Source: Stegostoma tigrinum
Taxonomy: Eukaryota
Assembly: GCF_030684315.1 (NCBI RefSeq)
Contig: NC_081365.1
Span: 39,330,985-39,394,984 of the forward strand
Length of the DNA stretch: 64,000 nt
Reading direction: 5' to 3'
Below are positions 1 through 64,000 of this stretch, piece after piece. A program made the position numbers and the translations under genes. Within the stretch, counting starts at the first letter, position 1. Every line of letters starts with the position of its first letter. Below the pieces are notes generated by a model. That model made no database searches, was not told the origin of the DNA, and worked only from the letters and a program-made list of their open reading frames with translations.

Positions 1-374
1 GTAAAGAAGGCAGTTTCCTTCCCTAAAGGACATGAGTGAATCAGATGGATTTTTGCAACAATCGACAATGGATTCACAGTCATCATTAGATTCTCAATTC
101 CAGATATTTTTTATTGAATTCAAATTCCACCATCTGCCATGGTGGGATTAGAACCCAGATCCCCAACTCTGGATTAAAAAGTCCAGCAATAATACCAGTA
201 GGCCATCGCCTCCCGTCTGTTCAACCTGCTACTCAACCAGGCCTTTTCAGAATTTTGGAAGCTTTAGGACAACAGTTCTGAAGAAGAGTCATACTAGACT
301 TGAAATACTACTCTGTTTCTCTCTCCACGGAGGCTACCAAAAACAGAAGTCACCAATACCTTACTGAGAATGGA

Positions 375-955
375 AAAACCAAAAGAACTGCAGATACGGT
401 GAATCAAGAACAAAAACAAAGTTGCTGGAAAAGCTCAGCAGATCTGGCAGCATCTGTGGAGGAGAAAACAGAGTTAACGTTTCAGGTCCGGTGACCCTTC
501 CTCAGAACTGATGGTGGCTGGGAAAACATCAGTTTATTTGCAGAAAATAAGGAGGTGAGTGGGGTAGGGAGTAAACGATAGAATAGAGCCCAAAGAGACA
601 AAAAGACAGTTGAACAGACAAAGTTGATGCTAACGATCAGGTTGGGAGGGGGAATAGTTGTTAATGGGGACTGTTAGTGACTAGCAACAGGAAACATGTA
701 GTGGCAGGCTATGTGGTAACGAGGCCCGGTGTGTGGGGTGGGGGACTGGGACATAGGGGTGTTTAAGGCCCGAAAATTATTGAACTTAATATCAAGTCCC
801 GAGGTCTGAAGGGCCCCCAAGTGGAAAATGAGGTGTTGTTCCTCCAGCTTGCGCTGGGCTTCACTGGAACACTGTAGCAAGCCAGAGACAGAGATGTTGA
901 CCAGGGAACAAGGTGGTGCATTGAAGTGGCAGGCAACAGTTTTGCGAGCAGAACA
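375..955 (-). mobile_element. PLE 3' fragment (GIY-YIG C-terminus plus pLTR)
   Basis: VACHFNAPPCS...GLLQCSSEAQRKLEEQHLIFHLGALQTSGL is homologous to the C-terminus of the 41066 ORF; hammerhead core downstream. Confidence 0.8.
476..505 (-). ncRNA. Minimal hammerhead motif of a second PLE family
   Basis: Reverse complement CTGAGGA-AGGGTCACCGGACCT-GAAACGTT; stem II GGGTC/GACCT differs from the 42723 family. Confidence 0.6.
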
Positions 956-1413
956 TTCAATGCACAATCCACAGCTGTAATCCACAAGACCTCCATCTAT
1001 ATCCATGCAACCTAGAAAAGCCTGAAATCGTGTCCAATTGTCTACTGTGTGCAACTAGCTTAAACAGCAGAACACTGCTTCCCTGCATGTTCTAACAGTG
1101 AAGAGGAATTCATACCTTTTAAAGATATTAACAGTGCATAATACCGCAGAGAGCTGCAACAGATGGCAATCTCTCAAACAAGCTGTCATATCTGATGAGC
1201 AAAGGAAAATTGCAGCTATTCTTTACAATGAGCTCATTCTGGGTGGCAGGGACAGGCAACTAAAGAGGGGATATGACAACAATAAACAACTGTTTTTCTT
1301 CATTGTTATTCTATTGTGACTGATCTCAAATGTTAGCAAACTACATCACAAGACCCTCAGGTGATTCCTCCCATTGTAAGTTACATGTCTATCCTATTTG
1401 TTATTAAACCAAA

Positions 1414-1607
1414 CTCCATCTTCGGTCCGCCTCCCCCTCTCTCCCTATTTATTCCAGTTCCCTCTCCCCATCCCCCTCTCTGATGAAGGGTCTAGGTCCG
1501 AAACGTCAGCTTTTGTGCTCCTGAGATGCTGCTTGGCCTGCTGTGTTCATCCAGCCTCGCATTTTATTATCATGGATTCTCCAGCATCTGCAGTTCCCAT
1601 TATCTCT
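1414..1607 (+). mobile_element. PLE 3' end fragment including terminal tail
   Basis: Near-identical to 42657-42811, plus ~30-nt tail GGATTCTCCAGCATCTGCAGTTCCCATTATCTC. Confidence 0.85.
1480..1507 (+). ncRNA. Minimal hammerhead motif in PLE 3' fragment
   Basis: CTGATGAAGGGTCTAGGTCCGAAACGTC. Confidence 0.65.
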
Positions 1608-3063
1608 GAAACTCATCTCACTACCTGTTTTCTATTTCTTAATGTAACAGAGTGCCCTGCTGAGATAATTGTATCTTTGAAACTCACCCTAGTATTCATA
1701 ATGATTAGGCCTTATGAGAATATCAACAAAAAATACTCAATTCAATTGCCTGTGCAAATGCTCCACCAACAAGCCTGTAAATCAAAATTATGCAGCAGTT
1801 CCCTTTAAAAACACAGCATTTTATACATAGTAGATTAAGCCCTTAGCAAGAGTCAAAATGCATTATTGACGATTTGATGGATAACACAGTTTAGAAAAAA
1901 GAGAAATTGCATTTCCATAGTGTCTATAATGCGACATGACAAAGTGGCCAATTAATTTTGCCTAGAATGTGAATGATGGAAACAGTCCACTCAGCATAAT
2001 CAGTCCATGCCAGCATTTACTAATACAGTGAGAAAATAATGATCATATTTCCTCATGCATTTCCATTTCCCTTTCTCCATAATTCAATGCCAATTCTGCC
2101 TCTATGACTAATCCTAAAAGAAACATATGTCAGGATTCTTTGTGTGAACATTTTTTTTCTGCTGTCTATTCTAATAAATATCATACTATAGCATCCAACC
2201 ACAATATCTAATTAACCTTAGCCAGTGGCCAACTCATTCTAATCATTAACAGGGTGAGGGCATCATTGACCAGGCAGCATTTATTGCCCAGAGGGCAGTT
2301 AAGAGTCAACCACATTGCTGTGGGCCTGGAGTCACATGTAGGCCAGACAAGGTAAGGCAGATCCTTCCCTAAGGGAGGTTAGTGAACCAGATGGGTTTAA
2401 GCGACAATCGACAATTCATGGTTATCATTAGATTCGCCCTCTGCCATGGCAGGATTTGGACCCAGGTCCCCAGAACATTATCAGTATACCACTAGGCCAT
2501 TACATCCCCAACTTGAGATTGGCTTCACTGTTAACTGCCAACTGACTTGCAATTTCACAAATTAAGAAAGTAAACTTAATTTTCAGTTTGCAAGAAAGTA
2601 CATTTTTTGTACTGGCTTCTGGTGGCTCATTGAAGAGGGGACTGGGCTCAGAGAACTTGCTGGCGATGTCAGTGGTCTTGGTATCCAGATGGCTCGGCTA
2701 TTGCTGGGGGGATACTGGCTCAATTTCCACTATGCCAGCTGGTAGAATTTAAATTAATGACTTAATAAAATCTGGAATTGAAATCCAGTCTCATTAATAA
2801 AGAACATGAAACAATTACCATTTGTCATAAAGACCCATCTGGTTCATAAATGCTCTTCTGAGAAGAAAATATGCAATCCTTACCTGGCCTGTTTTACATT
2901 TGAATCCAGACACACAGTAATGTGACTGACCCTTAACTGCCATCTGAAATGGCCTAAGAAACCAGAGATAATAGGAACTGAAGATGCTGGAGAATCCAAG
3001 ATAATAAAATGTGAGGCTGGATGAACACAGCAGGCCCAGCAGCATCTCAGGAGCACAAAAGCT

Positions 3064-3091
3064 GACGTTTCGGGCCTAGACCCTTCATCAG
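3064..3091 (-). ncRNA. Minimal hammerhead motif, left arm of palindromic mini-element
   Basis: Reverse complement reads CTGATGAAGGGTCTAGGCCCGAAACGTC, identical to 42723-42750. Confidence 0.72.
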
Positions 3092-3102
3092 AGAAGGGTC
3101 AT

Positions 3103-3130
3103 CTGATGAAGGATCTAGGCCCGAAACGTC
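3103..3130 (+). ncRNA. Minimal hammerhead motif, right arm of palindromic mini-element
   Basis: CTGATGAAGGATCTAGGCCCGAAACGTC, with one stem II mismatch. Confidence 0.65.
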
Positions 3131-4357
3131 AGCTTTTGTGCTCCTGAGATGCTGCTTGGCCTGCTGTGTTCATCCAGCCTCACATTTTATTATCTTGGCC
3201 TAAGAAACCATTCTGTTGCCCCAAACAGCACAAACATGGGAAGATATAGTTGTCACTGACCCACCGCAGCCTGCAAAGGGACTTCTGAATTTTTTTTTAA
3301 CGGCTATTTAGATGGACTATTAAATTCTCACTCTTAGTAAGTTTCCATTTTAAAAGCCCTTAGGCTCACCCTGATCCTTTCTTAGTCCGTAAATGTTTCA
3401 CTTTAATGCAGTACAAGCTTGAAGTGCAGCCATTGTTTTTATGTACGTAAATGGTGGCACTCACCTTACTCCTAACAAAGTCAATGTGTGAATGTTAATC
3501 AGGACACTCAATTTCTTTTTCAAATAACTTCATGCTTTTGTTTATACACTGAATGGGAGCCCATGCTTTCTAACTCTCACTTGGAGGAAAGCAGGGATAA
3601 TTTGAATGTAATCCATTCAGTTGGGAAGTGGAAACATCAGACTAGCCACTCATTTAACATCTTACCCAAAATCCATGGAATGTAAAATCTGGAGATGAGG
3701 GATATGGATGGCTGCTTCAGTCCCATCATTTTCCCACAGCACTGGTTAGATGAAACTGCATCTCTACTCCTACAGTACTGACAGCATGCTACTTTAAGAG
3801 TGAGGCTTGAAATTCTGAGTCAAAATTCTGACTCAGAAACAACATTGCTGAGGTGGAGGAGGAAGAAGTATGTGCTGTCAAAGCTAATCTGGTCATGAAA
3901 GTTCACTGCAGCATGTCTAACATGAGTCTCAGTTGGTTAGTAAGCAAAATGTAGTGATTACTCTCCTCAACAGACACTAGCTATTTGGAATAGTCTAGTA
4001 ATAGCTGGAATAAAATTCATAATTGAGTACATAATGACTCAGTAAGCATCCATGACAGAGGTGCCCAAATGCTGCATCATCTGGCTGCATGAACATGCTG
4101 CATTGAGATTCAGATGTAGCTTCAGATCTTAACATGACCTGTAGAGGCAAGGCCCTTCTCAGGGGAAAGACCTTCATAAGAATGTATCTACCCCTGCTTT
4201 AAAAATAATCAAGGTCACTGGAACTGTCCTCCTGAAAAGGTGGAGGAAGCAAAGACTTAATACCAACTGAGGAAAAAAGGTCTAATGTTGTTTGTAATTG
4301 CGTGACAAAACTAAACAGTGATCTGAGTTCTGGATTCTCCTGTAAGAGTAACCTTAT

Positions 4358-4651
4358 GGGCGGCACGGTGGCTCTGTGGTTAACACTGCAGCCTCACAGC
4401 ACCAGGGACCTAGGTTCAATTCCAGCCTCGGGCAACTGTCTGTGCAGAGTTTGCACATTCTCCCTGTGTCTGCGTGGGTTTCCTCCCACAGTCTAAAGAT
4501 GTGCAGGCTAGGTGGATCGGCCATGCTAAATTGCCCATAGTGTTCAGGGGTGTGTTGGTTATAGGGGGTTCCGTCTGGGAGGGATGCTGCATTGGGCAGT
4601 GTTGACTTGTTGGGCTGAAAGGCCTGTTTCCACACTGTAGGGAATCTAATC
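4358..4651 (+). mobile_element. HE1-type V-SINE
   Basis: tRNA-like head GGGCGGCACGGTGGC...GGTTCAATTCC, V-domain GAGTTTGCACATTCTCCC, CR1-like tail. Confidence 0.85.
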
Positions 4652-4679
4652 CAAACATTTTCTCCACCTTGACCTTGTC

Positions 4680-5480
4680 AAGATGTCTTAGGATCTTGCA
4701 TTTACTCAATCAGAATCAAATTGCATTTACTCTTGTAAAAATCCAGGGAATACATGCATAGTCTGTCCAATAGTTCTTCTTGAAGACTGTTTGTCCATTC
4801 CCAGATATTAGCCTGACAAACCTTCTCTGGACTGCTTCCAGTGCATTTACATGTCTTCTGAAGTAAGAGATTTTGAGTACAGGAGCAGGGATGTGTTGTT
4901 GCAGTTATACAGAGCCTTTGACCTAGAATATTGTGTGCAGTTTTGTGCCCATCCCTTCTGCTGTTTCATTGAATTCATTTATATAAATTGGAAACATTTG
5001 AGATCCCAGCACCATTTCCTGTGGCACAACACTCATTGCATCTTGCAAGCCTAAAGAAGAACCATTTATCCCGACTCTCTGATTCCTGTTCGCCGGCCAA
5101 TCTTCTATCCATGTCAAAATGCCACCTACTACAGCTCGAGACTTTATTTTCTACAATAACCTTCGATGTAGCACCTAATCAAATACCTTCTGCAAATATA
5201 AGTATACTGCACACATCCATTTCCTGTTATCCACATGTGTTTATTCCACAAAGTACTTTAATAGATTGGTCAAACACAATTTTCCTCTCACAAACCATGT
5301 TGACTCTACCTTAAATCTATTAACTGTCCCATTATAGCTTCCTTAATAACAGGCTTTATTGTTTATTTCCAGTGATGGATGTTAATTTCACTGGCCTGTA
5401 GCTTCCCGATTTCTGTGGGAGTTACAATTGCCATCTCCAATATTCTGGGATTTTCCGCAAATCAAGGGCATTTTTGGAAA
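4680..5480 (-). mobile_element. CR1 LINE fragment with internal inversion
   Basis: WIEDW.ANRNQRVGING and VPQ..VLG on minus; 4866-4944 lies in + orientation. Confidence 0.7.
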
Positions 5481-8419
5481 ATAAAAACTTGGAAAAGATA
5501 TCAGAACTATGTGAATTTTCAATGATAGTTTAAAGTTGGAATCTGATGTGATATGTTACCAGGAATGTGTGTGCAGCCACCAGGACAGGGAGATAGGTCA
5601 GTTTGTGTACCAGCTCCTCAGAGGGCAAGGTCACATTCCAGTTCTGTTGCAGGGGACATGGGTGATATCCTCTTTGACTTTGACTACAGAAAAATGATGA
5701 TGAATGTGCACACAAAAGCACTTGACGCATTGGCGTTGTCTGCCAAGTAGCCTGCGGTCACTGGATAGAAGCATGAGGAATCCACCTCCAGCAGATTAGA
5801 GGGTACTGTGGAGAGTCTGGAGCCCATGCTTTTTGCTATGAAGGGAGCATTTGATAACTGTAGTATCAGCCTTGACTGCAGCACAAACCAAATCCTACTG
5901 AAGTAACTGCACTGCATTGGAAACTCAGACAGAAGTCATCAGACTACCGGTTGCTAGTTTGCAGTCTCAAGGGCCAGACAGGTACCACAGACAGACGTCA
6001 AGGTGCTGCCTTGTAGCAGTGGAACATGAACCTGCTGTCCTCTCATCCTCCCATCATTGGCCTTGCTGCTGTCTGTCAGTCAGTTAACCAGCTCAGCCTG
6101 CTGCTGCCCGTGCTGAAGTGGTGTAGTCCAGAGCTGGACTCCTCAAGGCCCACAGTTGCTCAAGCCTGAGTTGCAAGGTCAGCTGCAGCTCTGCCAGTGA
6201 AGGTCAGCATCTAGGATAGCATTGCATAGGAGTGTTGGGTTAGACACGATCACTGCAAGGCAGACACAAAGGAAGTACAAACAATTATTAGCTTTTCTTG
6301 TATTGTTTACTACTGGCTGCATAAAGTCATTATATAATAATTGATGTGATTTTGAAGCAGGCCAAGGAGAATTTGCAAGTCTAATTCTGGGTATATTGTT
6401 TGGAAATGGTGGGTTCATGTAAATGCTGGCAAAGTCCCTATTAACTGAAGCAAAAACACACAAGATGGTCACATTCATGCGATCCAGTTGCATTTGGGAT
6501 ATATGGTTTCCTCCCTTCCTCCTTCTTCTCTCCACCTGCCAACGATGTGTCCTCGGGATCACAGAGAGATATTACCTGGGACCCTCATAATCATTACTGC
6601 GATAGAGGAGGCAGTGTACTGCATGGAGACCATCTCAGATGTTTCATCTACAAATTTCACCAATACCTTTCCCAGCACACAATAAACCAAGAAGTAAAAT
6701 CACTGTTTCAGGAGTCCATTAACCTGATGGTTTGTTCCAGTGTAGCAGGTGGTTCCATGTCTTTCAGTGTAGATCCTCCAACTTTGTGAGGTAAGATAGA
6801 AGGTCAGGAGACTCTGTACGGATGGGGCGGGAGGTAGCCAAGTGTCCCACAGCCACCCTGCGGCTAGAAGCTCATAGATGGTGGGAATTGTTAACTGTGT
6901 AAAATCATCAGGTGCTGCTAGGCTAGTGGGCATTTATTGAAATATCTCAACATATCACACATATCCAGTGTGTATGAACTGAATGATAACCCTGTGGCTA
7001 CAGTACTGCTACTTCATAGTGCCACATGGGTGCAGTTCTGAAGTACTGGAAAGCGTGTTATCATTATGAATACAAATGCCTCTCCATTCTGGGCCATTCT
7101 TCCTCATGGATAAAGTGGTTAATTTCTCCTCTTCTCCAAGAGTAAATCTGTCACCTCCAGGATACTTCTTTGCATAGCTAACATTTTGCTAATGCCATCA
7201 GTTTCTATCTGGAGGCATAGGAGATGCCTTCACAAAGGGTTTATTGGGCTTGACCTCTGAGCCACTGACATTCTGGCATGTGCCTTCTCCTCATGGCAGC
7301 CCCTTTGCATACATTGCTAACTCCTGAAAACAGATCTACAATTTTGTTTTTGGAGAGGAAAGTAAGTTTTTAAAAAAAATCTAAAGTCAGTGACTTTCCG
7401 TTCATGTTAAGATCCAAGCTGAGCAACTGGCACCTTAAGAGGTATTCAATAGAGCTTGACTTTTCTAGTGTGAGAAGTCAGAAATATTGTGCATCATACC
7501 AGAAGCCTTGGTATTGCAAAGAATGGAATGTTAAACAATGGGGTACATAATGAAATTTATAATTCAGAATCCCGCAATGCTTTACTCGTAAATACTGTAA
7601 AAGCATACAGGATGAAGGTTACCACAATGGGCAAGCCTTTGTATTTGGGCAAAGGCAAACAGAGAAAATAGTAAATGAAATGGGAGTATGAGACAAGTTG
7701 TGATGTGTTTTTTTTATAATCAAAATATACCAAGGATCTCTGTTTTACATGTATCTGCTTAATGCTGTTCCAGCAAAAGTAAGCTTTCAATGGGTTAAGT
7801 AAATAGCACAATGGTGCTACTGAATTATATTGTGTTTTCAAACAGTGTTCATAAAGTTGCCAACACAATTTGAGGTGAGAGGTTGCCATGGACACTTTCA
7901 CAATTATACATGCGGGTTCTATAATCTGACTGCTGAATGCTTTCAAGAAGGCCATACTTCTAAACAAATGGTTTTCACAGAAATGAATGAAACCCACAGA
8001 ACTTTTAACAACCCTTTGACAGCACATTTCCTTTATACAAAATGTTTATTCTGATGAGGACACAACAGTTATATAATACACTGATCATGCGTCTAAGGAT
8101 GGACACAACATAATTTGACCAAACATATATCTTGTGAGCGAAATATATGGCTTTTCTTCAAAACTCTTTCATATTTTCAGTCAACTTACAAAAATTACAT
8201 AATTTTAACCTAACTATTCGATCATGAAAATGCCACACTACAGGTCAAGTCGCAGCTTTTTAAATTAGCATACATAGTAATATATGGTATGCCTATGGAT
8301 TATAGGGAAGCTGATACAATAATTTTTCCAAGCAAAGACTATTCTACTGATTGCTTTTTCAGAAATAACATTGAACTTATAACAATGTTCTGTTTGCTCA
8401 CCATATTAAATGACTACAC

Positions 8420-10224: not shown

Positions 10225-10935
10225 CTGAAAACAACAAATGCTGGAGATCACGGTGAGTCAGACAGCATCCACGGAGACATCAAGGTAATGTTTTGAATCC
10301 AGATGACTCTTCATCAGAGCTGAAGTGAAGTATGGAGGGGACAGCATTTATGCTATTGTTTGGGGCTGGAGGTAGTGGGTGTAGGGTGCTAGTGGCGAAA
10401 AGATGTTGATAGATCGGAATGTGAGAATGGCAGAACAATGACGTGTCTCCTGCCAGACCTGAAGAGACAATAACTGGGATTGCAGGGGGGAGGATGGGAC
10501 ATGATAACAAGCTAAAGGAAAGCGAAGAATTGGTTCACAGTTTAAATGTGTTCCAGAAGACTGTAAAATACCTAGTCTGAAGATGAGATATTGTTCCTTT
10601 TCAGTTTGCACTGTGATTCTGGACACTGGAACACTGCAGTATGCCGAGGACAGACGTGTGGGTGTGTGTGCAAGATGCTGTGTTAAAATAACAAAGTGTG
10701 AAGCTGGATGAACACAGCGGTTATCTTGGATAACAAACAATCTTGGATTCTCCAGCATCTGCAGTTCCCATCATCTCTGCTGTGTTAAAATGGCCAGCTG
10801 TAGGAAAGTCAGGATCTTGTGTGCGCACAGACCGGAGGCGTTCTGCAAAGTGGTCACCCAGTTTGCGTTTGGTCTCTCCAACGTAGAGTAGGCCACATTG
10901 GGTGCAGCGAATACAATACACAGGACTGGAGGAGG
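10225..10935 (-). mobile_element. PLE 3' fragment (GIY-YIG plus pLTR)
   Basis: YCIRCTQCGLLYVGETKRKLGDHFAE and EQYLIFRLGILQ; eroded hammerhead at 10287-10317. Confidence 0.8.
10690..10777. mobile_element. 88-bp scrambled PLE terminal micro-insertion with 14-bp TSD, nested in an older PLE
   Basis: TGCTGTGTTAAAAT at 10676-10689 and 10778-10791. Insert is an inverted pLTR-end fragment, filler, and the direct 3' tail. Confidence 0.8.
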
Positions 10936-21048: not shown

Positions 21049-21263
21049 TCAGAGATAATGGGAACTGCAGATGCTGGAGAATCCAAGATAACAAAGTGTG
21101 AAGCTGGATGAACAAACTGGCCAAGCTGCATCTTAGGAGCATAAAAGCTGATGTTTCGGGCCTAGACCCTTCTGATGAAGGGCGTAGGTTTGAAATGTCA
21201 GCTTTTATGCTCCTAAGATGCAGCTTGGCCTGCTGTGTTCATCCAGCCCCGCACTTTGTCATC
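21049..21263. mobile_element. Palindromic PLE-derived mini-element (older copy)
   Basis: Same family and layout as 2965-3195. TSD TTTTGTCAACTRTGT at 21034-21048 and 21264-21278. Confidence 0.85.
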
Positions 21264-21612
21264 TTTTGTCAACTGTGTGTCACTCCATATGGCTTTATCA
21301 GAAGTGTACACCACTTTTGTCCTCTTTCTTTTACTCACTTGTTTATACAATTTCAATTAAAATTTAAAGTGCTGGTAAATGCAAGCAAGCTTTTCAGTGC
21401 TGAAACCCACAATCAGCTGATTGTGTTGCAGTTACGACTGGTCTATTAGATATCCTCCCATCAAACAAAGAGCCTCTGCACCATAGATACTACCTTCCTG
21501 TACAACTCAATTGCTATTAACATTAGACTTAAGAGTGTTGCACTAACGTTTATCAAATTTAAATTTCGCCTGTAAATATATGCCATTACATTGAATTCAA
21601 TTCATTCATGTG

Positions 21613-23434: not shown

Positions 23435-23630
23435 TGAATGCTGGAGAAACTCAGCAGGTAAGATAACATTTGTGAAGAGAAAAACAGTTAATGTCAGAAC
23501 TGAAGCAGTCATATCAGACTCAAAACATTAACTCTGTTTCTCTGTCCACAGATGCTGCCAGATCTGCTGAGTTTCTCCAACACTTTTTGAGTCTGCTTTG
23601 GATTTCCAGCATCAACAGTATTTTGCATTG
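23435..23630. mobile_element. Degenerate palindromic PLE 3'-end element (third family)
   Basis: TGCTGGAGAAACTCAGCAG is mirrored by CTGCTGAGTTTCTCCAACA; eroded CTGAAG..GTC..GAC..AAAACATT core near the centre. No TSD seen. Confidence 0.6.
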
Positions 23631-38066: not shown

Positions 38067-38139
38067 GCTGAAATAGCTTAGTTAGAAGAGCATTAGACTG
38101 AAGCTGTAAAGGTCCCTGGTTCGATTCTGGGTTTTGGCA
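38067..38139 (+). pseudogene. tRNA-Phe(GAA) pseudogene
   Basis: 73 nt colinear with vertebrate cytosolic tRNA-Phe (GCTGAAATAGCTTAG...GACTGAAGC...GGTTCGATT...TTTTGGCA). 10 substitutions versus the recalled consensus, including invariant G18>A and C40>G breaking the anticodon stem; 4 are CpG transitions. Confidence 0.85.
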
Positions 38140-39276: not shown

Positions 39277-41065
39277 TCCTTCTGCCACAGGTACCCAAGA
39301 CTGATTACACATGCACAAAAACAGCATGCTCCCCAAATAGTATTTAATGCTTGTTATCTTGTGTGGGATATAACATGCCTTGGGCAGTTTTTGAGGGCTT
39401 CACCGACATATTATTAAATTAGTTATAATTTTCCACGACTGCTTTATAAACTTTTATTTTAATTTTTGTTTTGCAAGATGTAGCGGCAAATATGAACATT
39501 ATTTGCAATAAGAAAGCTTCTATTGACAGCCAAGATACCAATCTAATCAGCATAAGCTTATTACTCCACTGCATGCAATTGCAGAGACAGTTAAAGTAAA
39601 CAGCTGTCTCTGACTGAGTGCAATTTACAGGAAATGGTTAGTCTCTCACTTTCTGGACCTCATTTATAAAAGGCAACCATGTCAGCTCTCCATTTATGTC
39701 ACTGAAGTGTTTCCACAAAATGTTCACTCTGCTAATGTTTTAGGGAACATCTCAATTATACAATGGAGTACATTTCAGGGCACGACAGGTAATGAAAAAA
39801 AGCACACACAAAATTGCACCAGTTTGGACAAGTGTTTTTGCGTCCCTCTATTTTGTTTTCAACCTATTTGCATGTCATATGCATTTTCTGCTATGAAACT
39901 GCTATCAAGCAGTGATTGGAAAATTTCTTTAGAAGAAAGCAAACTGCTTTGAAAAAATGTCCTTTGATGTATTTAGACACACAGGTAGACAATTGCTGTT
40001 AAATTAAAAGATAAATATTGTTATCAACATGCTTGGTCTATCACTTGCAATTAACTGCCTTTTAAATAACAGAAAATAATTTTGAAACACTATACAGAGC
40101 TAATGGCAAAATATTTATCCTTGTAGCAAAACCTCACTTCAACAGCATCTTCAAAAACCAGCAAATTGACATATTAGCAGTAGCTTCCAATTGTGATTAA
40201 TTCAGTTTGGGCACAGGACCAGTTCTAGCATTCTTTTAAAAACACAGATTTGATTATTACTGGACAGAATTTGCAGTTATATATCCACAATCATTTAGTT
40301 TGATTTCATCTCCTGCACTCATCTTACTGATGTTGGGTGAACTGTATGGAAAACACCAAAACATAACCTCCAGGCCCACAACTAACATTTTGGTGATAAC
40401 AAGGTGTGGAGCTGGATGAACACAGCAGGCCAAGCAGCATCAGAGGAGCAGGAAAGCTGACGTTTCGGGCCTAGACCCTACATCAGAAAAGGGGGATGGG
40501 GTGAGGGAACTGGAATAAATAGGGAGAGAGGGGGAGGCGGACCGAAGATGGAGAGAAAAGAAGATAGGTGGAGAGAGTATAGGTGGGGAGGTAGGGAGGG
40601 GATAGGTCAGTCCAGGGAAGATGGACAGGTTAAGGAGGTGGGATGAGGTTAGTAGGTAGATGGGGGTGCCGCTTGGGGTGGGAGGAAGGGATGGGTGAGA
40701 GGAAGAACAGGTTAGGGAGGCAGAGACAGGTTGGACTGGTTTTGGGATGCAGTGGGTGGGGGGGAAGAGCTGGGCTGGTTGTGTGGTGCAGTGGGGGGAG
40801 GGGACGAACTGGGCTGGTTTAGGGATGCAGTAGGGGAAGGGGAGATTTTGAAACTGGTGAAGTCCACATTGATACCATTAGACTGCAGAGTTCAGCTAGG
40901 CGGATGAGGGTGTCGGTAGAGGGGGACTGGTCGGGCCTGCGGGACAGGAAGAAGCGGAGGGCCTTGAGGCCATCTGCATGCGGAATGCAGGTGTATAGGG
41001 ACTGGACGTCCATGGTGAAGATGAGGTGTTGGGGGCCAGGGAATTGGAAGTCCTGGAGGAGGTGG

Positions 41066-42499
41066 AGGCCCTCCGCTTCTTCCTGTCCCGCAGGCCCGAC
41101 CAGTCCCCCTCCACCGACACCCTCATCCGCCTAGCTGAACTCGTCCTCACACTCAACAACTTCTCTTTTGACTCCTCCCACTTCCTACAGACTAAGGGGG
41201 TGGCCATGGGCACCCGCATGGGCCCCAGCTATGCCTGCCTCTTTGTAGGTTACGTGGAACAGTCCCTCTTCCGCACCTACACAGGCCCCAAACCCCACCT
41301 CTTCCTCCGGTACATTGATGACTGTATTGGCGCCGCCTCTTGCTCCCCAGAGGAGCTTGAACAGTTCATCCACTTCACCAACACCTTCCACCCCAACCTT
41401 CAGTTCACCTGGGCCATCTCCAGCACATCCGTCACCTTCCTGGACCTCTCAGTCTCCATCTCAGGCAACCAGCTTGTAACTGATGTCCATTTCAAGCCCA
41501 CCGACTCCCACAGCTACCTAGAATACACCTCCTCCCACTCAACATCCTGCAAAAATTCCATCCCCTATTCCCAATTCTTCCGCCTCCGCCGCATCTGCTC
41601 CCACGATAAGACATTCCACTCCCGCACATCCCAGATGTCCAAGTTCTTTAAGGACCGCAACTTTCCCCCCACAGTGATCGAGAACGCCCTTGACCGCGTC
41701 TCCCGTATTTCCCGCAACACATCCCTCACACCCCGCTCCCCCCACAACCGCCCAAAGAGGATTCCCCTCGTTCTCACACACCACCCTACCAACCTCCGGT
41801 TACAACGCATCATCCTCCGACACTTCCGCCATTTACAATCCGACCCCACCACCCAAGACATTTTTCCATCCCCACCCCTGTCTGCTTTCCAGAGAGACCA
41901 CTCTCTCTGTGACTCCCTTGTTCGCTCCACACTGCCCTCCAACCCCACCACACCCGGCACCTTCCCCTGCAACCGCAGGAAATGCTACACTTGCCCCCAC
42001 ACCTCCTCCCTCACCCCTATCCCCGGCCCCAAGATGACATTCCACATTAAGCAGAGGTTCACCTGCACATCTGCCAATGTGGTATACTGCATCCACTGTA
42101 CCCGGTGTGGCTTCCTCTACATTGGGGAAACCAAGCGGAGGCTTGGAGACCGCTTTGCAGAACACCTCCGCTCAGTTCGCAACCAACAACTGCACCTCCC
42201 AGTTGCAAACCATTTCCACTCCCCCTCCCATTCTCTAGATGACATGTCCGTCATGGGCCTCCTGCAGTGCCACAATGATGCCACCCGAAGGTTGCAGGCA
42301 ACTCATATTCCGCCTGGGAACCCTGCAGCCATATGGTATCAATGTGGACTTCACCAGTTTCAAAATCTCCCCTTCCCCTACTGCATCCCTAAACCAGCCC
42401 AGTTCGTCCCCTCCCCCCACTGCACCACACAACCAGCCCAGCTCTTCCCCCCCACCCACTGCATCCCAAAACCAGTCCAACCTGTCTCTGCCTCCCTAA
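41066..42499 (+). pseudogene. PLE reverse transcriptase / GIY-YIG endonuclease ORF (5'-truncated, one frameshift near 42298)
   Basis: QTKGVAMGTRMGPSYA, LRYIDD, FLDL and FKPTD RT motifs. PCNRRKCYTC Cys linker (Neptune-type). NVVYCIHCTRCGFLYIGET GIY-YIG motif. C-terminus QLIFRLGTLQPYGIN continues in a shifted frame. Confidence 0.9.
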
Positions 42500-42722
42500 C
42501 CGGTTCTTCCTCTCACCCATCCCTTCCTCCCACCCCAAGCCGCACCCCCATCTACCTATAACCTCATCCCACCTCCTTGACCTGTCCGTCTTCCCTGGAC
42601 TGACCTATCCCCTCCCTACCTCCCCACCTACACTCTCTCCACCTATCTTCTTTTCTCTCCATCTTCGGTCCGCCTCCCCCTCTCTCCCTATTTATTCCAG
42701 TTACCTCTCCCCATCCCCCTCT

Positions 42723-42750
42723 CTGATGAAGGGTCTAGGCCCGAAACGTC
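42723..42750 (+). ncRNA. Minimal type I hammerhead ribozyme motif in PLE pLTR
   Basis: CTGATGA-A-GGGT(CTAG)GCCC-GAAACGTC: conserved core, stem II hairpin, palindromic ACGT in place of helix III, GUC triplet. Confidence 0.75.
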
Positions 42751-42811
42751 AGCTTTTGTGCTCCTGAGATGCTGCTTGGCCTGCTGTGTTCATCCAGCCT
42801 CACATTTTATT

Positions 42812-43290
42812 AACCAAGTTATAGTCCAACAGGTTTATTTGAAGAGACAAGCTTTCACAGCCTTGCTCCCTCTTCATGTGTTGGTGAGAAAGGTGGAATC
42901 AGACACAGAATTTATAAGTAAAAGATCAAAGGATCATAGCACTGATGAGGATGTATTAAACAAACCTACGATGCTATTAAATCTTTAATGAGTTGGAAGA
43001 TTTTAATTGATTAATATGTAGATGTAAACCCCTGATTCCTTTCCAGTCACTGCCCCAAGAGAACTAATGGTTTTATCAGTATGAAGAACAGGTGACATTT
43101 TAGGCCAGGCAAATTAGGGGTCAGACCTTGTTTAGAATCCATTTGTATTTTGTTTGGAGTCAGACTGGTGTTATTTCGAAAGTAGGAATTTATGAAAAGC
43201 CATATAGCCCAACTGTCTATAAATTGTGTGTTTTTTGAACAAAATATAATGTATCCACAAATACAAATTCACCCCATAGATTTACATGGG
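42812..43290 (-). mobile_element. PLE 3' remnant of the 50371 family
   Basis: GTTATAGTCCAACAGGTTTATTTG terminal motif is shared with the 50371-50576 arms. Confidence 0.55.
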
Positions 43291-63844: not shown

Positions 63845-63940
63845 TATGAAGAAAGGGTCTAGGCACGAAACAACAGCTTTTGTGCTCCTGAGATGCTGCT
63901 TGGCCTGCTGTGTTCATCCAGCTCCACACTTTGTTATCTT
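63845..63940 (+). mobile_element. PLE pLTR end fragment beginning at the hammerhead core
   Basis: ATGAAGAAAGGGTCTAGGCACGAAAC...CTTTGTTATCTT. Another CTGATGAAGGG begins at ~63984 and runs off the window. Confidence 0.75.
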
Positions 63941-64000
63941 AGCTCAAAAAAACTGTTGGCATAGGGTCTTGCCTTCACAATTTCTGATGAAGGGTTTATT

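What the first reader, a model, noticed from the sequence alone, without database searches (positions are those of the whole stretch)
2950..3210. Palindromic double-hammerhead mini-retroelement with a 15-bp TSD
Seen: a 231-bp insert made only of two back-to-back ~97-bp copies of a PLE 3' end. Each arm starts 1-2 nt before a CTGATGA...GAAACGTC core, the spacer is 9 nt (GAAGGGTCA, itself a piece of the core), one arm has an extra ~30-nt tail, and the TSD is perfect. Established: PLE pLTRs carry minimal hammerheads, can be inverted, and have a short 3' tail. Inference: a non-coding, MITE-looking but retro-derived unit with a ribozyme core on both strands. It is either a self-propagating retrozyme-like family or the stereotyped minimal product of PLE insertion.
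Basis: partly seen in the sequence, partly recalled or inferred. Interest (0 to 1): 0.8.

Follow-up and report, generated by a model that had tools for sequence, protein, structure and literature searches.

The report
Mirror-image mini Penelope insertion in shark
A 231-base insert made of two mirror-image copies of the last 97 bases of a Penelope-like jumping gene is real and landed after two shark species split, but it looks like the smallest version of that element's usual two-sided insertion scar, not a new self-copying element.

Summary
Arms 2996-3092 and 3102-3198 are 97 nt and 98% complementary, with a 9-nt spacer. One arm carries a 31-nt tail (2965-2995). A perfect 15-bp direct repeat flanks the insert. 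A contig from a related species (coded organism C) joins 2949 directly to 3196, so its orthologous site is empty and this is a true lineage-specific insertion.

The arms are the 3' end of a reverse transcriptase plus GIY-YIG endonuclease element (a Penelope-like element, PLE) that is present at very high copy number.

An inverted 5'-truncated partner, a 30-40-nt tail on one side and a target duplication are the published PLE insertion signature. A PLE protein has been shown in vitro to nick and extend both target strands from two internal start sites.

The window holds five head-to-head PLE structures, and each has a different junction. One pair was copied from two different templates. I found no copy sharing the focal junction. 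The best reading is therefore a dead-end minimal product of one double-primed insertion.

Arm 5' ends do cluster within a few bases upstream of CUGAUGA. I attribute this to run-off on short RNAs that start about 30 nt downstream of a TATA-like box; this is untested.

As RNA, the whole insert is a 97-bp hairpin, so neither hammerhead can fold.

Earlier first-reader notes describe similar units on other DNA of this genome (s1-882242, s1-882234).

The parts
2950..2964 (.). Left copy of the target-site duplication, TGGCCTAAGAAACCA. The last 2 nt (CA) could also be templated by the element.
   Evidence: family D3, 100% identical. The empty site in organism C has one copy (record 15).
2965..2995 (-). 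The 31-nt 3' 'tail' of the left arm (33 nt if CA at 2963-2964 is counted). It lies between the two reverse-transcription start sites; both sites read ...ATTATCT.
   Evidence: The same tail ends copies C (1576-1606), B-left and G-right. A one-sided tail of 30-40 nt is described for PLEs in PMC8557442 and PMC11167929.
2996..3094 (-). Left arm, sense on the minus strand. It is a PLE 3' end that starts 3 nt upstream of CUGAUGA. The min-hammerhead core is 3064-3091, with an intact helix II (GGGU/GCCC).
   Evidence: Positions 3093-3094 match the native upstream sequence TC of copies C and D.
3095..3101 (.). Junction filler AGGGTCA. Together with GA at 3093-3094 it reads GAAGGGTC, an exact copy of arm nucleotides 7-14, followed by one extra A. 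I read this as the mark of a brief fold-back and a template jump.
   Evidence: The mechanism is inferred.
3102..3198 (+). Right arm without a tail. It starts 1 nt upstream of CUGAUGA (3103-3109). GAAAC is at 3123-3127 and GUC at 3128-3130. The G>A change at 3113 breaks the third pair of helix II. The last 3 nt (TGG) overlap the TSD.
3196..3210 (.). Right copy of the target-site duplication. The inferred nick sites are AACCA^TT on the top strand and GGCCA^TT on the bottom strand, 15 bp apart.
   Evidence: The nick positions are inferred from the TSD ends.
21052..21264 (.). Copy B. A second, older palindromic mini-insert with a tail on one side. The TSD is TTTTGTCAACTrTGT, 15 nt with 1 mismatch. 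The centre is CCCTTC-TGAT-GAAGGG and lacks the focal spacer.
10690..10777 (.). Copy G. An 88-bp head-to-head insert made only of the last ~30-60 nt of the element plus one tail. It has a perfect 14-bp TSD, TGCTGTGTTAAAAT.
40397..42812 (.). Pair E(-)/D(+). A 2.4-kb head-to-head PLE pair. D (41066-42812) carries the reverse transcriptase C-terminal half, a CX4CXXC linker, GIY-YIG, the 3' UTR and the arm. E is an inverted copy with an internal deletion.
1414..1608 (+). Copy C. A solo copy with 65 nt of native upstream sequence (including TATTTAT at 1446-1452), the arm and the tail. A contig from organism C aligns only from 1609 onward.
63846..63940 (+). Copy F. A solo arm without a tail whose 5' end lies at the hammerhead start. 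A further arm, K, begins at 63979 at the window edge.
23439..23620 (.). Copy I. An old head-to-head structure from a diverged PLE family. One arm starts about 7 nt upstream of the CUGA box and the other starts inside GAAAC.

Best explanation
The insert is the minimal form of the normal two-sided insertion product of a Penelope-like retrotransposon. It comes from one integration event and cannot transpose again.

Proposed steps, with their status:
1. The PLE endonuclease nicked both target strands 15 bp apart, each after CCA^TT. The duplication is shown; the nick positions are inferred from it.
2. Each 3'-OH primed reverse transcription on a PLE RNA at one of the element's two internal start sites, both reading ...AUCU(C)UG. 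The top-strand primer used the distal site, which gives the 31-33-nt tail. The bottom-strand primer used the proximal site, which gives no tail. This is inferred from the anatomy and from in vitro data on the Anolis PLE.
3. Both cDNAs stopped within 3 nt of the 5' edge of the hammerhead motif. After a short fold-back (GAAGGGTC plus A) the two cDNAs were joined head to head by template jumping. This step is inferred.

Why the 5' ends fall at the hammerhead edge: I think most templates are short RNAs that start there. The only TATA-like box of the 3' UTR lies 28-33 nt upstream of the observed ends. This is an untested hypothesis and I give it about 0.35.

Consequences: the product lacks that promoter region. 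Its transcript would be a perfect hairpin, so neither ribozyme copy can fold.
For: A real insertion. An organism-C contig joins 2949 to 3196, and two organism-A samples carry both flank junctions.

The arms are a PLE 3' end. Copy D has one ORF with sub-threshold RVT_1 and GIY-YIG matches, a YIDD motif and a CX4CXXC linker. It has 670 homologues at E<=1e-10, many of them carrying RVT_1 and GIY-YIG; the closest are 94% (Stegostoma tigrinum) and 86% (Rhincodon typus) identical. The 3' UTR and the arm follow this ORF directly.

Published signature. An inverted 5'-truncated copy, a one-sided 30-40-nt tail and a variable TSD are described in PMC8557442. The Anolis PLE protein cleaves and extends both strands, starts at two internal sites whose interval is the tail, and is predicted to be a dimer (PMC11167929).

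Different junctions. The five head-to-head structures in the window (A, B, G, I, D/E) all differ. Contigs show further variants: 3090>1475, 3094>1474/1476 and 3094>3138-3151, including spacer-less perfect palindromes. Another 2409 joints of unclassified kind were flagged but not listed.

Two templates. E has an internal deletion of about 1175 nt that D lacks. D and E differ at 15 of the last 112 nt but at only 6 of 368 nt upstream (Fisher p = 2e-6).

Both primers end in CA and can pair with UG at either start site.

5' ends cluster. By my reading of the copy alignments, 7 of 14 arm ends lie within 15 nt of the hammerhead start (binomial 6e-8).

TATA-like box. It sits at -34/-35 in the main family and in families H and J.

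The insert RNA folds as a hairpin of -186.8 kcal/mol, z = -24.
Against: Copy numbers per junction could not be measured. De Bruijn contigs collapse identical copies, and most joints were not listed.

Some junction variants have k-mer depth 20-100 times the single-copy level. This could reflect re-amplification rather than recurrence.

Copy B fits a single-cDNA snap-back exactly (CCCTTC-ATCA-GAAGGG). The focal copy cannot distinguish snap-back from two cDNAs.

No RNA data were available, so the start-site idea is untested. Drosophila virilis Penelope uses a TATA-less promoter whose start site lies about 120 nt upstream of its hammerhead (PMC2377424; Cervera 2014).

The 5' end of a complete unit in this genome is therefore unknown.
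Confidence: 0.72

Rival explanations
1. A self-propagating, non-autonomous palindromic family (retrozyme-like or SINE-like). The 231-bp unit would be transcribed, recognised by the PLE reverse transcriptase through its 3' arm, and copied as a whole.
For: Two palindromic units (A and B) share the same layout, with the tail on one side and the centre near CUGAUGA, within one 64-kb window. Contigs from organisms A and B span similar centres (records 6, 7, 29, 30). Several junction forms have k-mer depth far above single copy. An earlier first-reader note reads similar units as a family (s1-882242).
Against: A and B differ by 17 nt at the centre and come from different subfamilies. No listed contig shares the focal spacer. 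The unit lacks the upstream TATA-like region. In the Anolis system the RNA must extend well past the start sites, and the tail-less arm has none of that sequence. A 97-bp perfect hairpin RNA would be a poor template.
Confidence: 0.1
2. The same PLE event, but made from a single cDNA. The first cDNA snapped back on the native CCCTTC...GAAGGG inverted repeat at the hammerhead start and copied itself. No second primed cDNA was involved.
For: The native sequence has CCCTTC and GAAGGG flanking the start of CUGAUGA. The centre of copy B is exactly the predicted snap-back product. The focal spacer GAAGGGTC is a fold-back copy.
Against: The outer end of the tail-less arm coincides with the proximal start site in A, B and F, which points to a second initiation. 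The D/E arms come from different templates. Spacer-less perfect palindromes seen in contigs cannot form by snap-back. In vitro, both strands are extended.
Confidence: 0.13
3. A DNA-level origin: a foldback or MITE-type DNA transposon, or an assembly artefact of a palindromic long read.
For: The unit has a MITE-like look, being short, palindromic and TSD-flanked. The exact centre is not confirmed by an independent contig.
Against: The arms are the 3' end of a reverse transcriptase/endonuclease element. The tail is asymmetric. The flank/insert junctions are confirmed in two samples, and the site is empty in a sister species.
Confidence: 0.03

Closest known systems
Canonical PLE insertion architecture: a partial tandem or inverted 5'-truncated copy with a one-sided 30-40-bp tail (Evgen'ev & Arkhipova 2005; Arkhipova 2006; Craig et al. 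2021, PMC8557442)
   Same: Two 5'-truncated copies lie head to head. The tail is on one end only. There is a TSD. The hammerhead lies in the terminal repeat region.
   Different: Both copies are cut down to 97 nt, so no ORF or UTR is left and the two CUGAUGA boxes lie 11 nt apart. Both 5' ends fall at the hammerhead edge.
Anolis Poseidon PAc in vitro system (Frangieh et al. 2024, PMC11167929)
   Same: Both target strands are used as primers. There are two adjacent internal start sites, and the interval between them is the tail. The start sites lie about 100-130 nt 3' of the hammerhead. Nicks fall next to an ATT motif.
   Different: Here 2-3 nt of primer/RNA microhomology (CA/UG) is possible at both start sites, whereas PAc showed no homology. 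The joining of the two products was not observed in vitro. The linker is Neptune-type rather than Poseidon.
Minimal hammerheads of metazoan PLEs (Cervera & De la Pena 2014, PMC4209133)
   Same: The CUGAUGA and GAAA boxes, the extra base before helix II, the G10.1-C11.1 pair, the palindromic ACGU in place of helix III, and the GUC site are all present. That paper already noted dual motifs 100-700 bp apart on opposite strands.
   Different: The arms lack the 5' strand of helix I, and the native element offers only 2 bp there. The two motifs are base-paired to each other in any transcript of the insert.
Animal non-LTR retrozymes (bioRxiv 10.64898/2026.07.22.740005)
   Same: Short non-coding units derived from PLE terminal regions that carry type-I hammerheads. 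Solo 'monomers' are common.
   Different: Retrozymes are head-to-tail tandem repeats thought to move through circular RNA. This unit is an inverted pair with a TSD, and no tandem copies were seen.
L1 twin priming
   Same: Both target strands prime cDNA in one event, which produces an inverted structure inside a single TSD.
   Different: Twin priming gives an inversion of different parts of one RNA. Here both arms are the same 3' segment, each started at a dedicated internal site.

Membership tests
Penelope-like element (insertion product) | The sequence is homologous to the 3' end of an element encoding reverse transcriptase plus GIY-YIG endonuclease in one ORF. | tested here: met
   Copy D has its ORF at 41026-42561, with RVT_1 (E = 0.0025) and GIY-YIG (E = 0.0057), both below Pfam's cut-offs. 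It has 670 homologues, many with precomputed RVT_1 and GIY-YIG domains. The arm follows its 3' UTR.
Penelope-like element (insertion product) | [quoted passage not shown] | tested here: met
   The tail is 31-33 nt at 2965-2995 and is absent from the right arm. The same tail is present in copies B, C and G.
Penelope-like element (insertion product) | An adjacent inverted 5'-truncated copy and a target-site duplication. | tested here: met
   One search shows the inverted repeat and the 15-bp repeat. One search shows the empty site.
Penelope-like element (insertion product) | Preference for AT-rich or ATT nick sites. | tested here: inconclusive
   Both inferred nicks are CCA^TT. Flanks after tail ends are AT-rich across 742 contigs. 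The TSDs of B and G do not show a clear ATT.
PLE minimal hammerhead ribozyme | CUGAUGA and GAAA boxes, an unpaired base between positions 9 and 10.1, a G10.1-C11.1 pair, a palindromic 15.2-16.2, and a GUH cleavage triplet. | tested here: met
   Read directly. Helix II is kept by different pairs in families H (GGGUC/GACCU) and J (GAGUC/GAUUC).
PLE minimal hammerhead ribozyme | A helix I of 4-5 bp formed by the bases 5' of CUGAUGA and those 3' of the cut site. | tested here: not met
   The arms keep only 1-3 nt 5' of the box. The native main-family sequence allows 2 bp. Family H allows 4 bp.
PLE minimal hammerhead ribozyme | A match to a curated hammerhead covariance model. | tested here: not met
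   No Rfam hammerhead hit at E<=10 on the insert or on a native copy, and none at gathering score in the window. This is expected for motifs without helix III.
PLE minimal hammerhead ribozyme | Self-cleavage after GUC. | not testable with these tools
   The insert folds as a full hairpin. In single arms the lowest-energy fold pairs CUGAUG with CGUCAG.
Non-LTR retrozyme | Head-to-tail tandem units, each with a hammerhead, giving unit-length circular RNA. | tested here: not met
   The orientation is inverted. No tandem repeat was found in 1-6000.
MITE / foldback DNA transposon | Terminal inverted repeats recognised by a transposase, with a short fixed-length TSD. | tested here: not met
   The arms are a retroelement 3' end and the ends are asymmetric because of the tail. 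The TSDs are 14-15 bp.

The most novel reading that the evidence does not exclude
The 97-nt arm is a discrete retrotransposition unit. Every 5'-truncated PLE copy that keeps its 3' UTR would fire a TATA-driven promoter whose start site lies at the 5' edge of the hammerhead. The resulting short RNAs carry the reverse-transcriptase entry sites and would be copied to their ends on one or both nicked strands. This would account for much of the very large number of solo and mirror-image arms. It would also make these scars a natural record of symmetric double priming by a dimeric PLE enzyme. Any transcribed mirror-image copy would in addition be a ready-made hairpin RNA directed against the element.
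Probability: 0.3. Interest if true: 0.6.

Novelty: new member of a known kind. Interest (0 to 1): 0.38.

Why it matters
How PLEs build their inverted and tandem terminal structures is still listed as an open question (PMC8557442). Extension of both target strands has so far been seen only in vitro (PMC11167929).

Clean, young mini-inserts like this one have a proven empty site, both start sites used in one event, and a readable junction. They are in vivo evidence for double priming, and they could be counted genome-wide to work out the joining rules.

The tight clustering of 5' ends at the hammerhead edge is, as far as I could find, not described. It gives a testable hint about where PLE template RNAs begin.

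It does not add a new class of mobile element or a working double ribozyme.

Tried and rejected
Rfam scans of the insert, of a native copy and of the whole window gave no hammerhead hit. The insert matched only generic microRNA-hairpin models below threshold.

phmmer of the PLE ORF against PDB sequences found nothing.

The protein-atlas search could not read a new sequence.

I could therefore not fetch full-length shark PLE loci to see where a complete unit starts.

I checked whether the PLE ORF starts inside the arm, as it does in Anolis PAc. The only ATG frame stops right after the tail (TGA), and no homologue's N-terminus matches an arm translation. I rejected this idea.

I considered hammerhead cleavage as the source of the 5' ends. 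The ends lie 24-30 nt upstream of GUC, so I rejected it.

I considered an intron 3' splice site at the hammerhead edge, as in D. virilis. There is no AG at that position, so I rejected it.

The only raw reads on offer were bisulfite libraries, which are too unlike the reference to lay. I used assembled contigs instead, and these cannot give copy numbers.

I did not type the Anolis PAc sequence from the paper's supplement into any tool. I compared it by eye only.
Full report
**1. What is there**

- The repeat finder reports inverted arms 2996-3092 and 3102-3198: 97 nt, 98% complementary, with 9 nt between them.
- It also reports a perfect 15-nt direct repeat, TGGCCTAAGAAACCA, at 2950-2964 and 3196-3210.
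- The insert is 2965-3195 (231 bp). It consists of a 31-nt stretch (2965-2995), the reverse-complement arm, the spacer GAAGGGTCA, and the forward arm.
- The two arms differ at two positions. Each arm carries one private change relative to other copies.
- Each strand reads CUGAUGA-A-GGGUCUAGGCCC-GAAAC-GUC in its 3' half.

**2. It is a true, lineage-specific insertion**

I laid public assembled contigs on 1350-3600.
- In two samples of the source species (coded organism A), contigs run without a difference from unique flank into the insert on both sides (2452-2992 and 3175-3600).
- In a related species (organism C), one 1241-nt contig aligns to 2764-2949 and continues directly at 3196-3600. That is the empty site with a single copy of the 15-mer.
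- Flank divergence between the two species is about 6-7%. The arms differ by 2%, so the insertion is younger than the species split.
- A contig from organism C also aligns to the window only from 1609, directly after the solo copy at 1414-1608. This is consistent with that copy being absent there, although the upstream side was not listed.
- The exact central junction was not covered by a listed contig. It rests on the window assembly.

**3. What the arms are**

BLAST and a profile search inside the window find many further copies.

Copy D (41066-42812, + strand) shows the context.
- It has an ORF (41026-42561) with a YIDD reverse-transcriptase motif, a CX4CXXC motif and a GIY-YIG motif.
- Its Pfam matches to RVT_1 and GIY-YIG are weak.
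- After the ORF comes a C/T-rich 3' UTR and then the arm.
- The word-indexed protein search found 670 homologues at E<=1e-10. The closest are 94% identical (Stegostoma tigrinum) and 86% identical (Rhincodon typus). Many carry precomputed RVT_1 and GIY-YIG domains.

Reverse transcriptase followed by a GIY-YIG endonuclease in one ORF defines Penelope-like elements (PLEs). The CX2-5CXXC linker is described for the Neptune and Nematis clades (PMC8557442). The arm is therefore the last 97 nt of a PLE.

Summed k-mer depth over the arm is five orders of magnitude above single-copy flanks. This is a crude sign of very high copy number, not a count.

**4. Comparison with what is known of PLE insertions**

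- Craig et al. 2021 describe an inverted 5'-truncated copy next to the main copy. They also describe a 30-40-bp tail that is often present at only one end, and a variable target duplication.
- Frangieh et al. 2024 showed that the Anolis PLE protein cleaves and extends both target strands. It starts reverse transcription at two adjacent internal sites, and the tail is the interval between them. The protein is predicted to be a dimer, and hammerhead cleavage is not needed.
- Cervera and De la Pena 2014 defined the minimal PLE hammerhead. They already noted pairs of motifs 100-700 bp apart on opposite strands.
- The focal insert has all of these marks in miniature. The 31-nt stretch at 2965-2995 is the tail: the same sequence ends copies C, B-left and G-right.
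- Both the tail end and the tail-less arm end read ...ATTATCT followed by (C)TG. The two flanking primers...AACCA-3' on the top strand and ...GGCCA-3' on the bottom strand, both end in CA, which can pair with that UG.
- The simplest reading is two nicks 15 bp apart, each after CCA^TT. Each nick primed cDNA at one of the two start sites.

**5. Family or independent products?**

The window contains five head-to-head PLE structures, and no two share a junction.
- **A** is the focal insert.
- **B** (21052-21264) comes from another subfamily. It has a 15-nt TSD with one mismatch and a 4-nt centre, CCCTTC-TGAT-GAAGGG. It is 17 nt shorter at the centre than A.
- **G** (10690-10777) is 88 bp, has a perfect 14-nt TSD, and its junction lies near the 3' end.
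- **I** (about 23439-23620) is an old structure from a diverged PLE family.
- **D/E** is the 2.4-kb pair.

In D/E the arms cannot be copies of each other.
- E lacks about 1175 nt that D has.
- The two differ at 15 of the last 112 nt but at only 6 of 368 nt upstream (Fisher p = 2e-6).
- This argues for two primed cDNAs from two templates rather than one snapped-back cDNA.

The contigs add more junction variants near the hammerhead start.
- Examples are 3090>1475 with an extra T, 3094>1474, 3094>1476 and 3094>3138-3151.
- Decoded, 3094>1476 is a spacer-less perfect palindrome, ...CATCAGAGAG|CTCTCTGATG....
- Another 2409 joints of unclassified kind were flagged but not listed.
- Contigs from a third species (organism B) also span palindrome centres, with 3-9 gap letters relative to the focal one.

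I saw no copy with the focal spacer. Contigs collapse identical repeats, so per-junction copy numbers cannot be read. Several junction forms have depth 20-100 times single copy, which could mean recurrence or some re-amplification. I therefore hold the family reading at about 0.1 rather than zero.

**6. Where the arms begin**

I measure positions from the C of CUGAUGA.
- The focal arms start at -3 and -1.
- The commonest contig-derived start is -4, with others at -5, -6 and +1.
- Solo copies F and K start at about -1 to -3. Copy B starts at +2 and +6. The right arm of I starts at about -7.
- By this reading, 7 of 14 arm copies in the window begin within a 15-nt span. The binomial probability against uniform truncation over 500 nt is 6e-8.
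- The ends lie 24-30 nt upstream of the GUC site, so hammerhead cleavage does not make them.

Two observations suggest run-off at a real RNA 5' end followed by end-to-end template jumping. One is the focal filler (an exact copy of arm nucleotides 7-14 plus one A). The other is the spacer-less palindromes.

A possible cause is a promoter. In the main family, the only all-A/T heptamer in the 70 nt upstream is TATTTAT at -34/-35. Family H has AAATAAA at -34, and family J has CATAAAT at about -35. The box therefore lies 28-33 nt upstream of the observed ends, which is the usual TATA-to-start spacing. This spacing comes from my own knowledge, not from a tool result.

For comparison:
- In Drosophila virilis, the 3' pseudo-LTR can drive outward transcription. 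However, that promoter is TATA-less, and its start site lies about 120 nt upstream of the hammerhead (PMC2377424).
- The Anolis consensus has TATATATT about 45 nt upstream of its CUGAGGA (read by eye).

I have no RNA data and could not fetch full-length elements, so this remains a hypothesis at about 0.35.

**7. The ribozyme**

The motif meets four hallmarks listed by Cervera and De la Pena: the boxes, the extra base before helix II, the G10.1-C11.1 pair, and the palindromic ACGU.

Helix II is kept by different base pairs in diverged families H and J. The motif is therefore conserved in source elements.

In the focal insert, however:
- the 5' strand of helix I is missing;
- one arm has a G>A change that breaks a helix II pair (3113);
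- no Rfam hammerhead model matches;
- the whole insert folds as a 97-bp hairpin of -186.8 kcal/mol, z = -24;
- single arms have no unusual stability, and their best fold pairs CUGAUG with CGUCAG.

A working double hammerhead is unlikely.

**8. Verdict**

The retro-derived, PLE-terminus reading is right.

This is a new member of a known kind. It has some value as in vivo evidence for two-strand priming, and for the 5'-end hot spot.

Earlier first-reader notes on other DNA of this genome describe the same pattern: s1-882242, s1-882234, s1-882079 and s1-882068. I used them as leads only.

Noticed in passing
window 1604-1609 joined to 2998-3002 (contigs): Many contigs of organism A (6-28 per variant per run, about 90 in the listed rows of X1) carry an arm plus tail followed directly by an inverted tail-less arm, that is, a 3'-to-3' arrangement with the tail as the loop. 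For comparison, 742 contigs end in unrelated AT-rich flank after the tail. None was listed for organisms B or C. The cause could be self-targeting of the tail by the endonuclease, tandem palindromic units, or a native stem-loop. It is unexplained.
   Followed up: partly
window 3046 joined to 3162 with CTGAGATG between: A single rearranged head-to-head junction inside the arm has very high k-mer depth: 854 and 3008, against about 10 and 50 for unique sequence. At least one odd junction form therefore seems to have been amplified.
   Followed up: no
window 40397-42812: The inverted partners D and E are 98% alike over about 370 nt of 3' UTR but only 87% alike in the last 112 nt. The change point lies about 20 nt 5' of the hammerhead. 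E also lacks about 1175 nt of ORF. The terminal module appears to be exchanged between subfamilies.
   Followed up: partly
window 385-1054 (-): This is the 3' part of a diverged PLE family. It has an endonuclease C-terminal ORF (674-1054) and a hammerhead variant CUGAGGA...GAAAC-GUU. A 4-bp helix I is possible, and helix II is kept by compensatory changes.
   Followed up: partly
window 10239-10330 (-): A third PLE family with CUGAUGA-A-GAGUC...GAUUC-AAAAC-AUU. It is a decayed hammerhead that still has its native upstream sequence.
   Followed up: no
window 2243-2490: An unrelated, very high-copy repeat (SINE-like) with huge k-mer depth in organisms A and C, and many contigs breaking at 2283, 2289 and 2357.
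   Followed up: no
window 38067-38139 (+): A tRNA match above Rfam's gathering score (47.2 bits). It was not examined, and it may be a tRNA-derived SINE head.
   Followed up: no
protein P0002: The NCBI gene model LOC125456532 of Stegostoma tigrinum is a PLE remnant. Its predicted protein reads through the 3' UTR and ends in the translated hammerhead (...SLMKGLRPKRQLLCS). Other hits carry names such as 'divergent protein kinase domain 1C isoform X2' and 'chitinase domain-containing protein 1 isoform X1', which suggests that PLE fragments have been merged into host gene models.
   Followed up: no
window 1608-1685: TGAAACTCA occurs right after the tail of copy C and again 69 nt later. The sequence between contains a tail-like GAGATAAT. 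This may be a further small PLE-related insertion.
   Followed up: no
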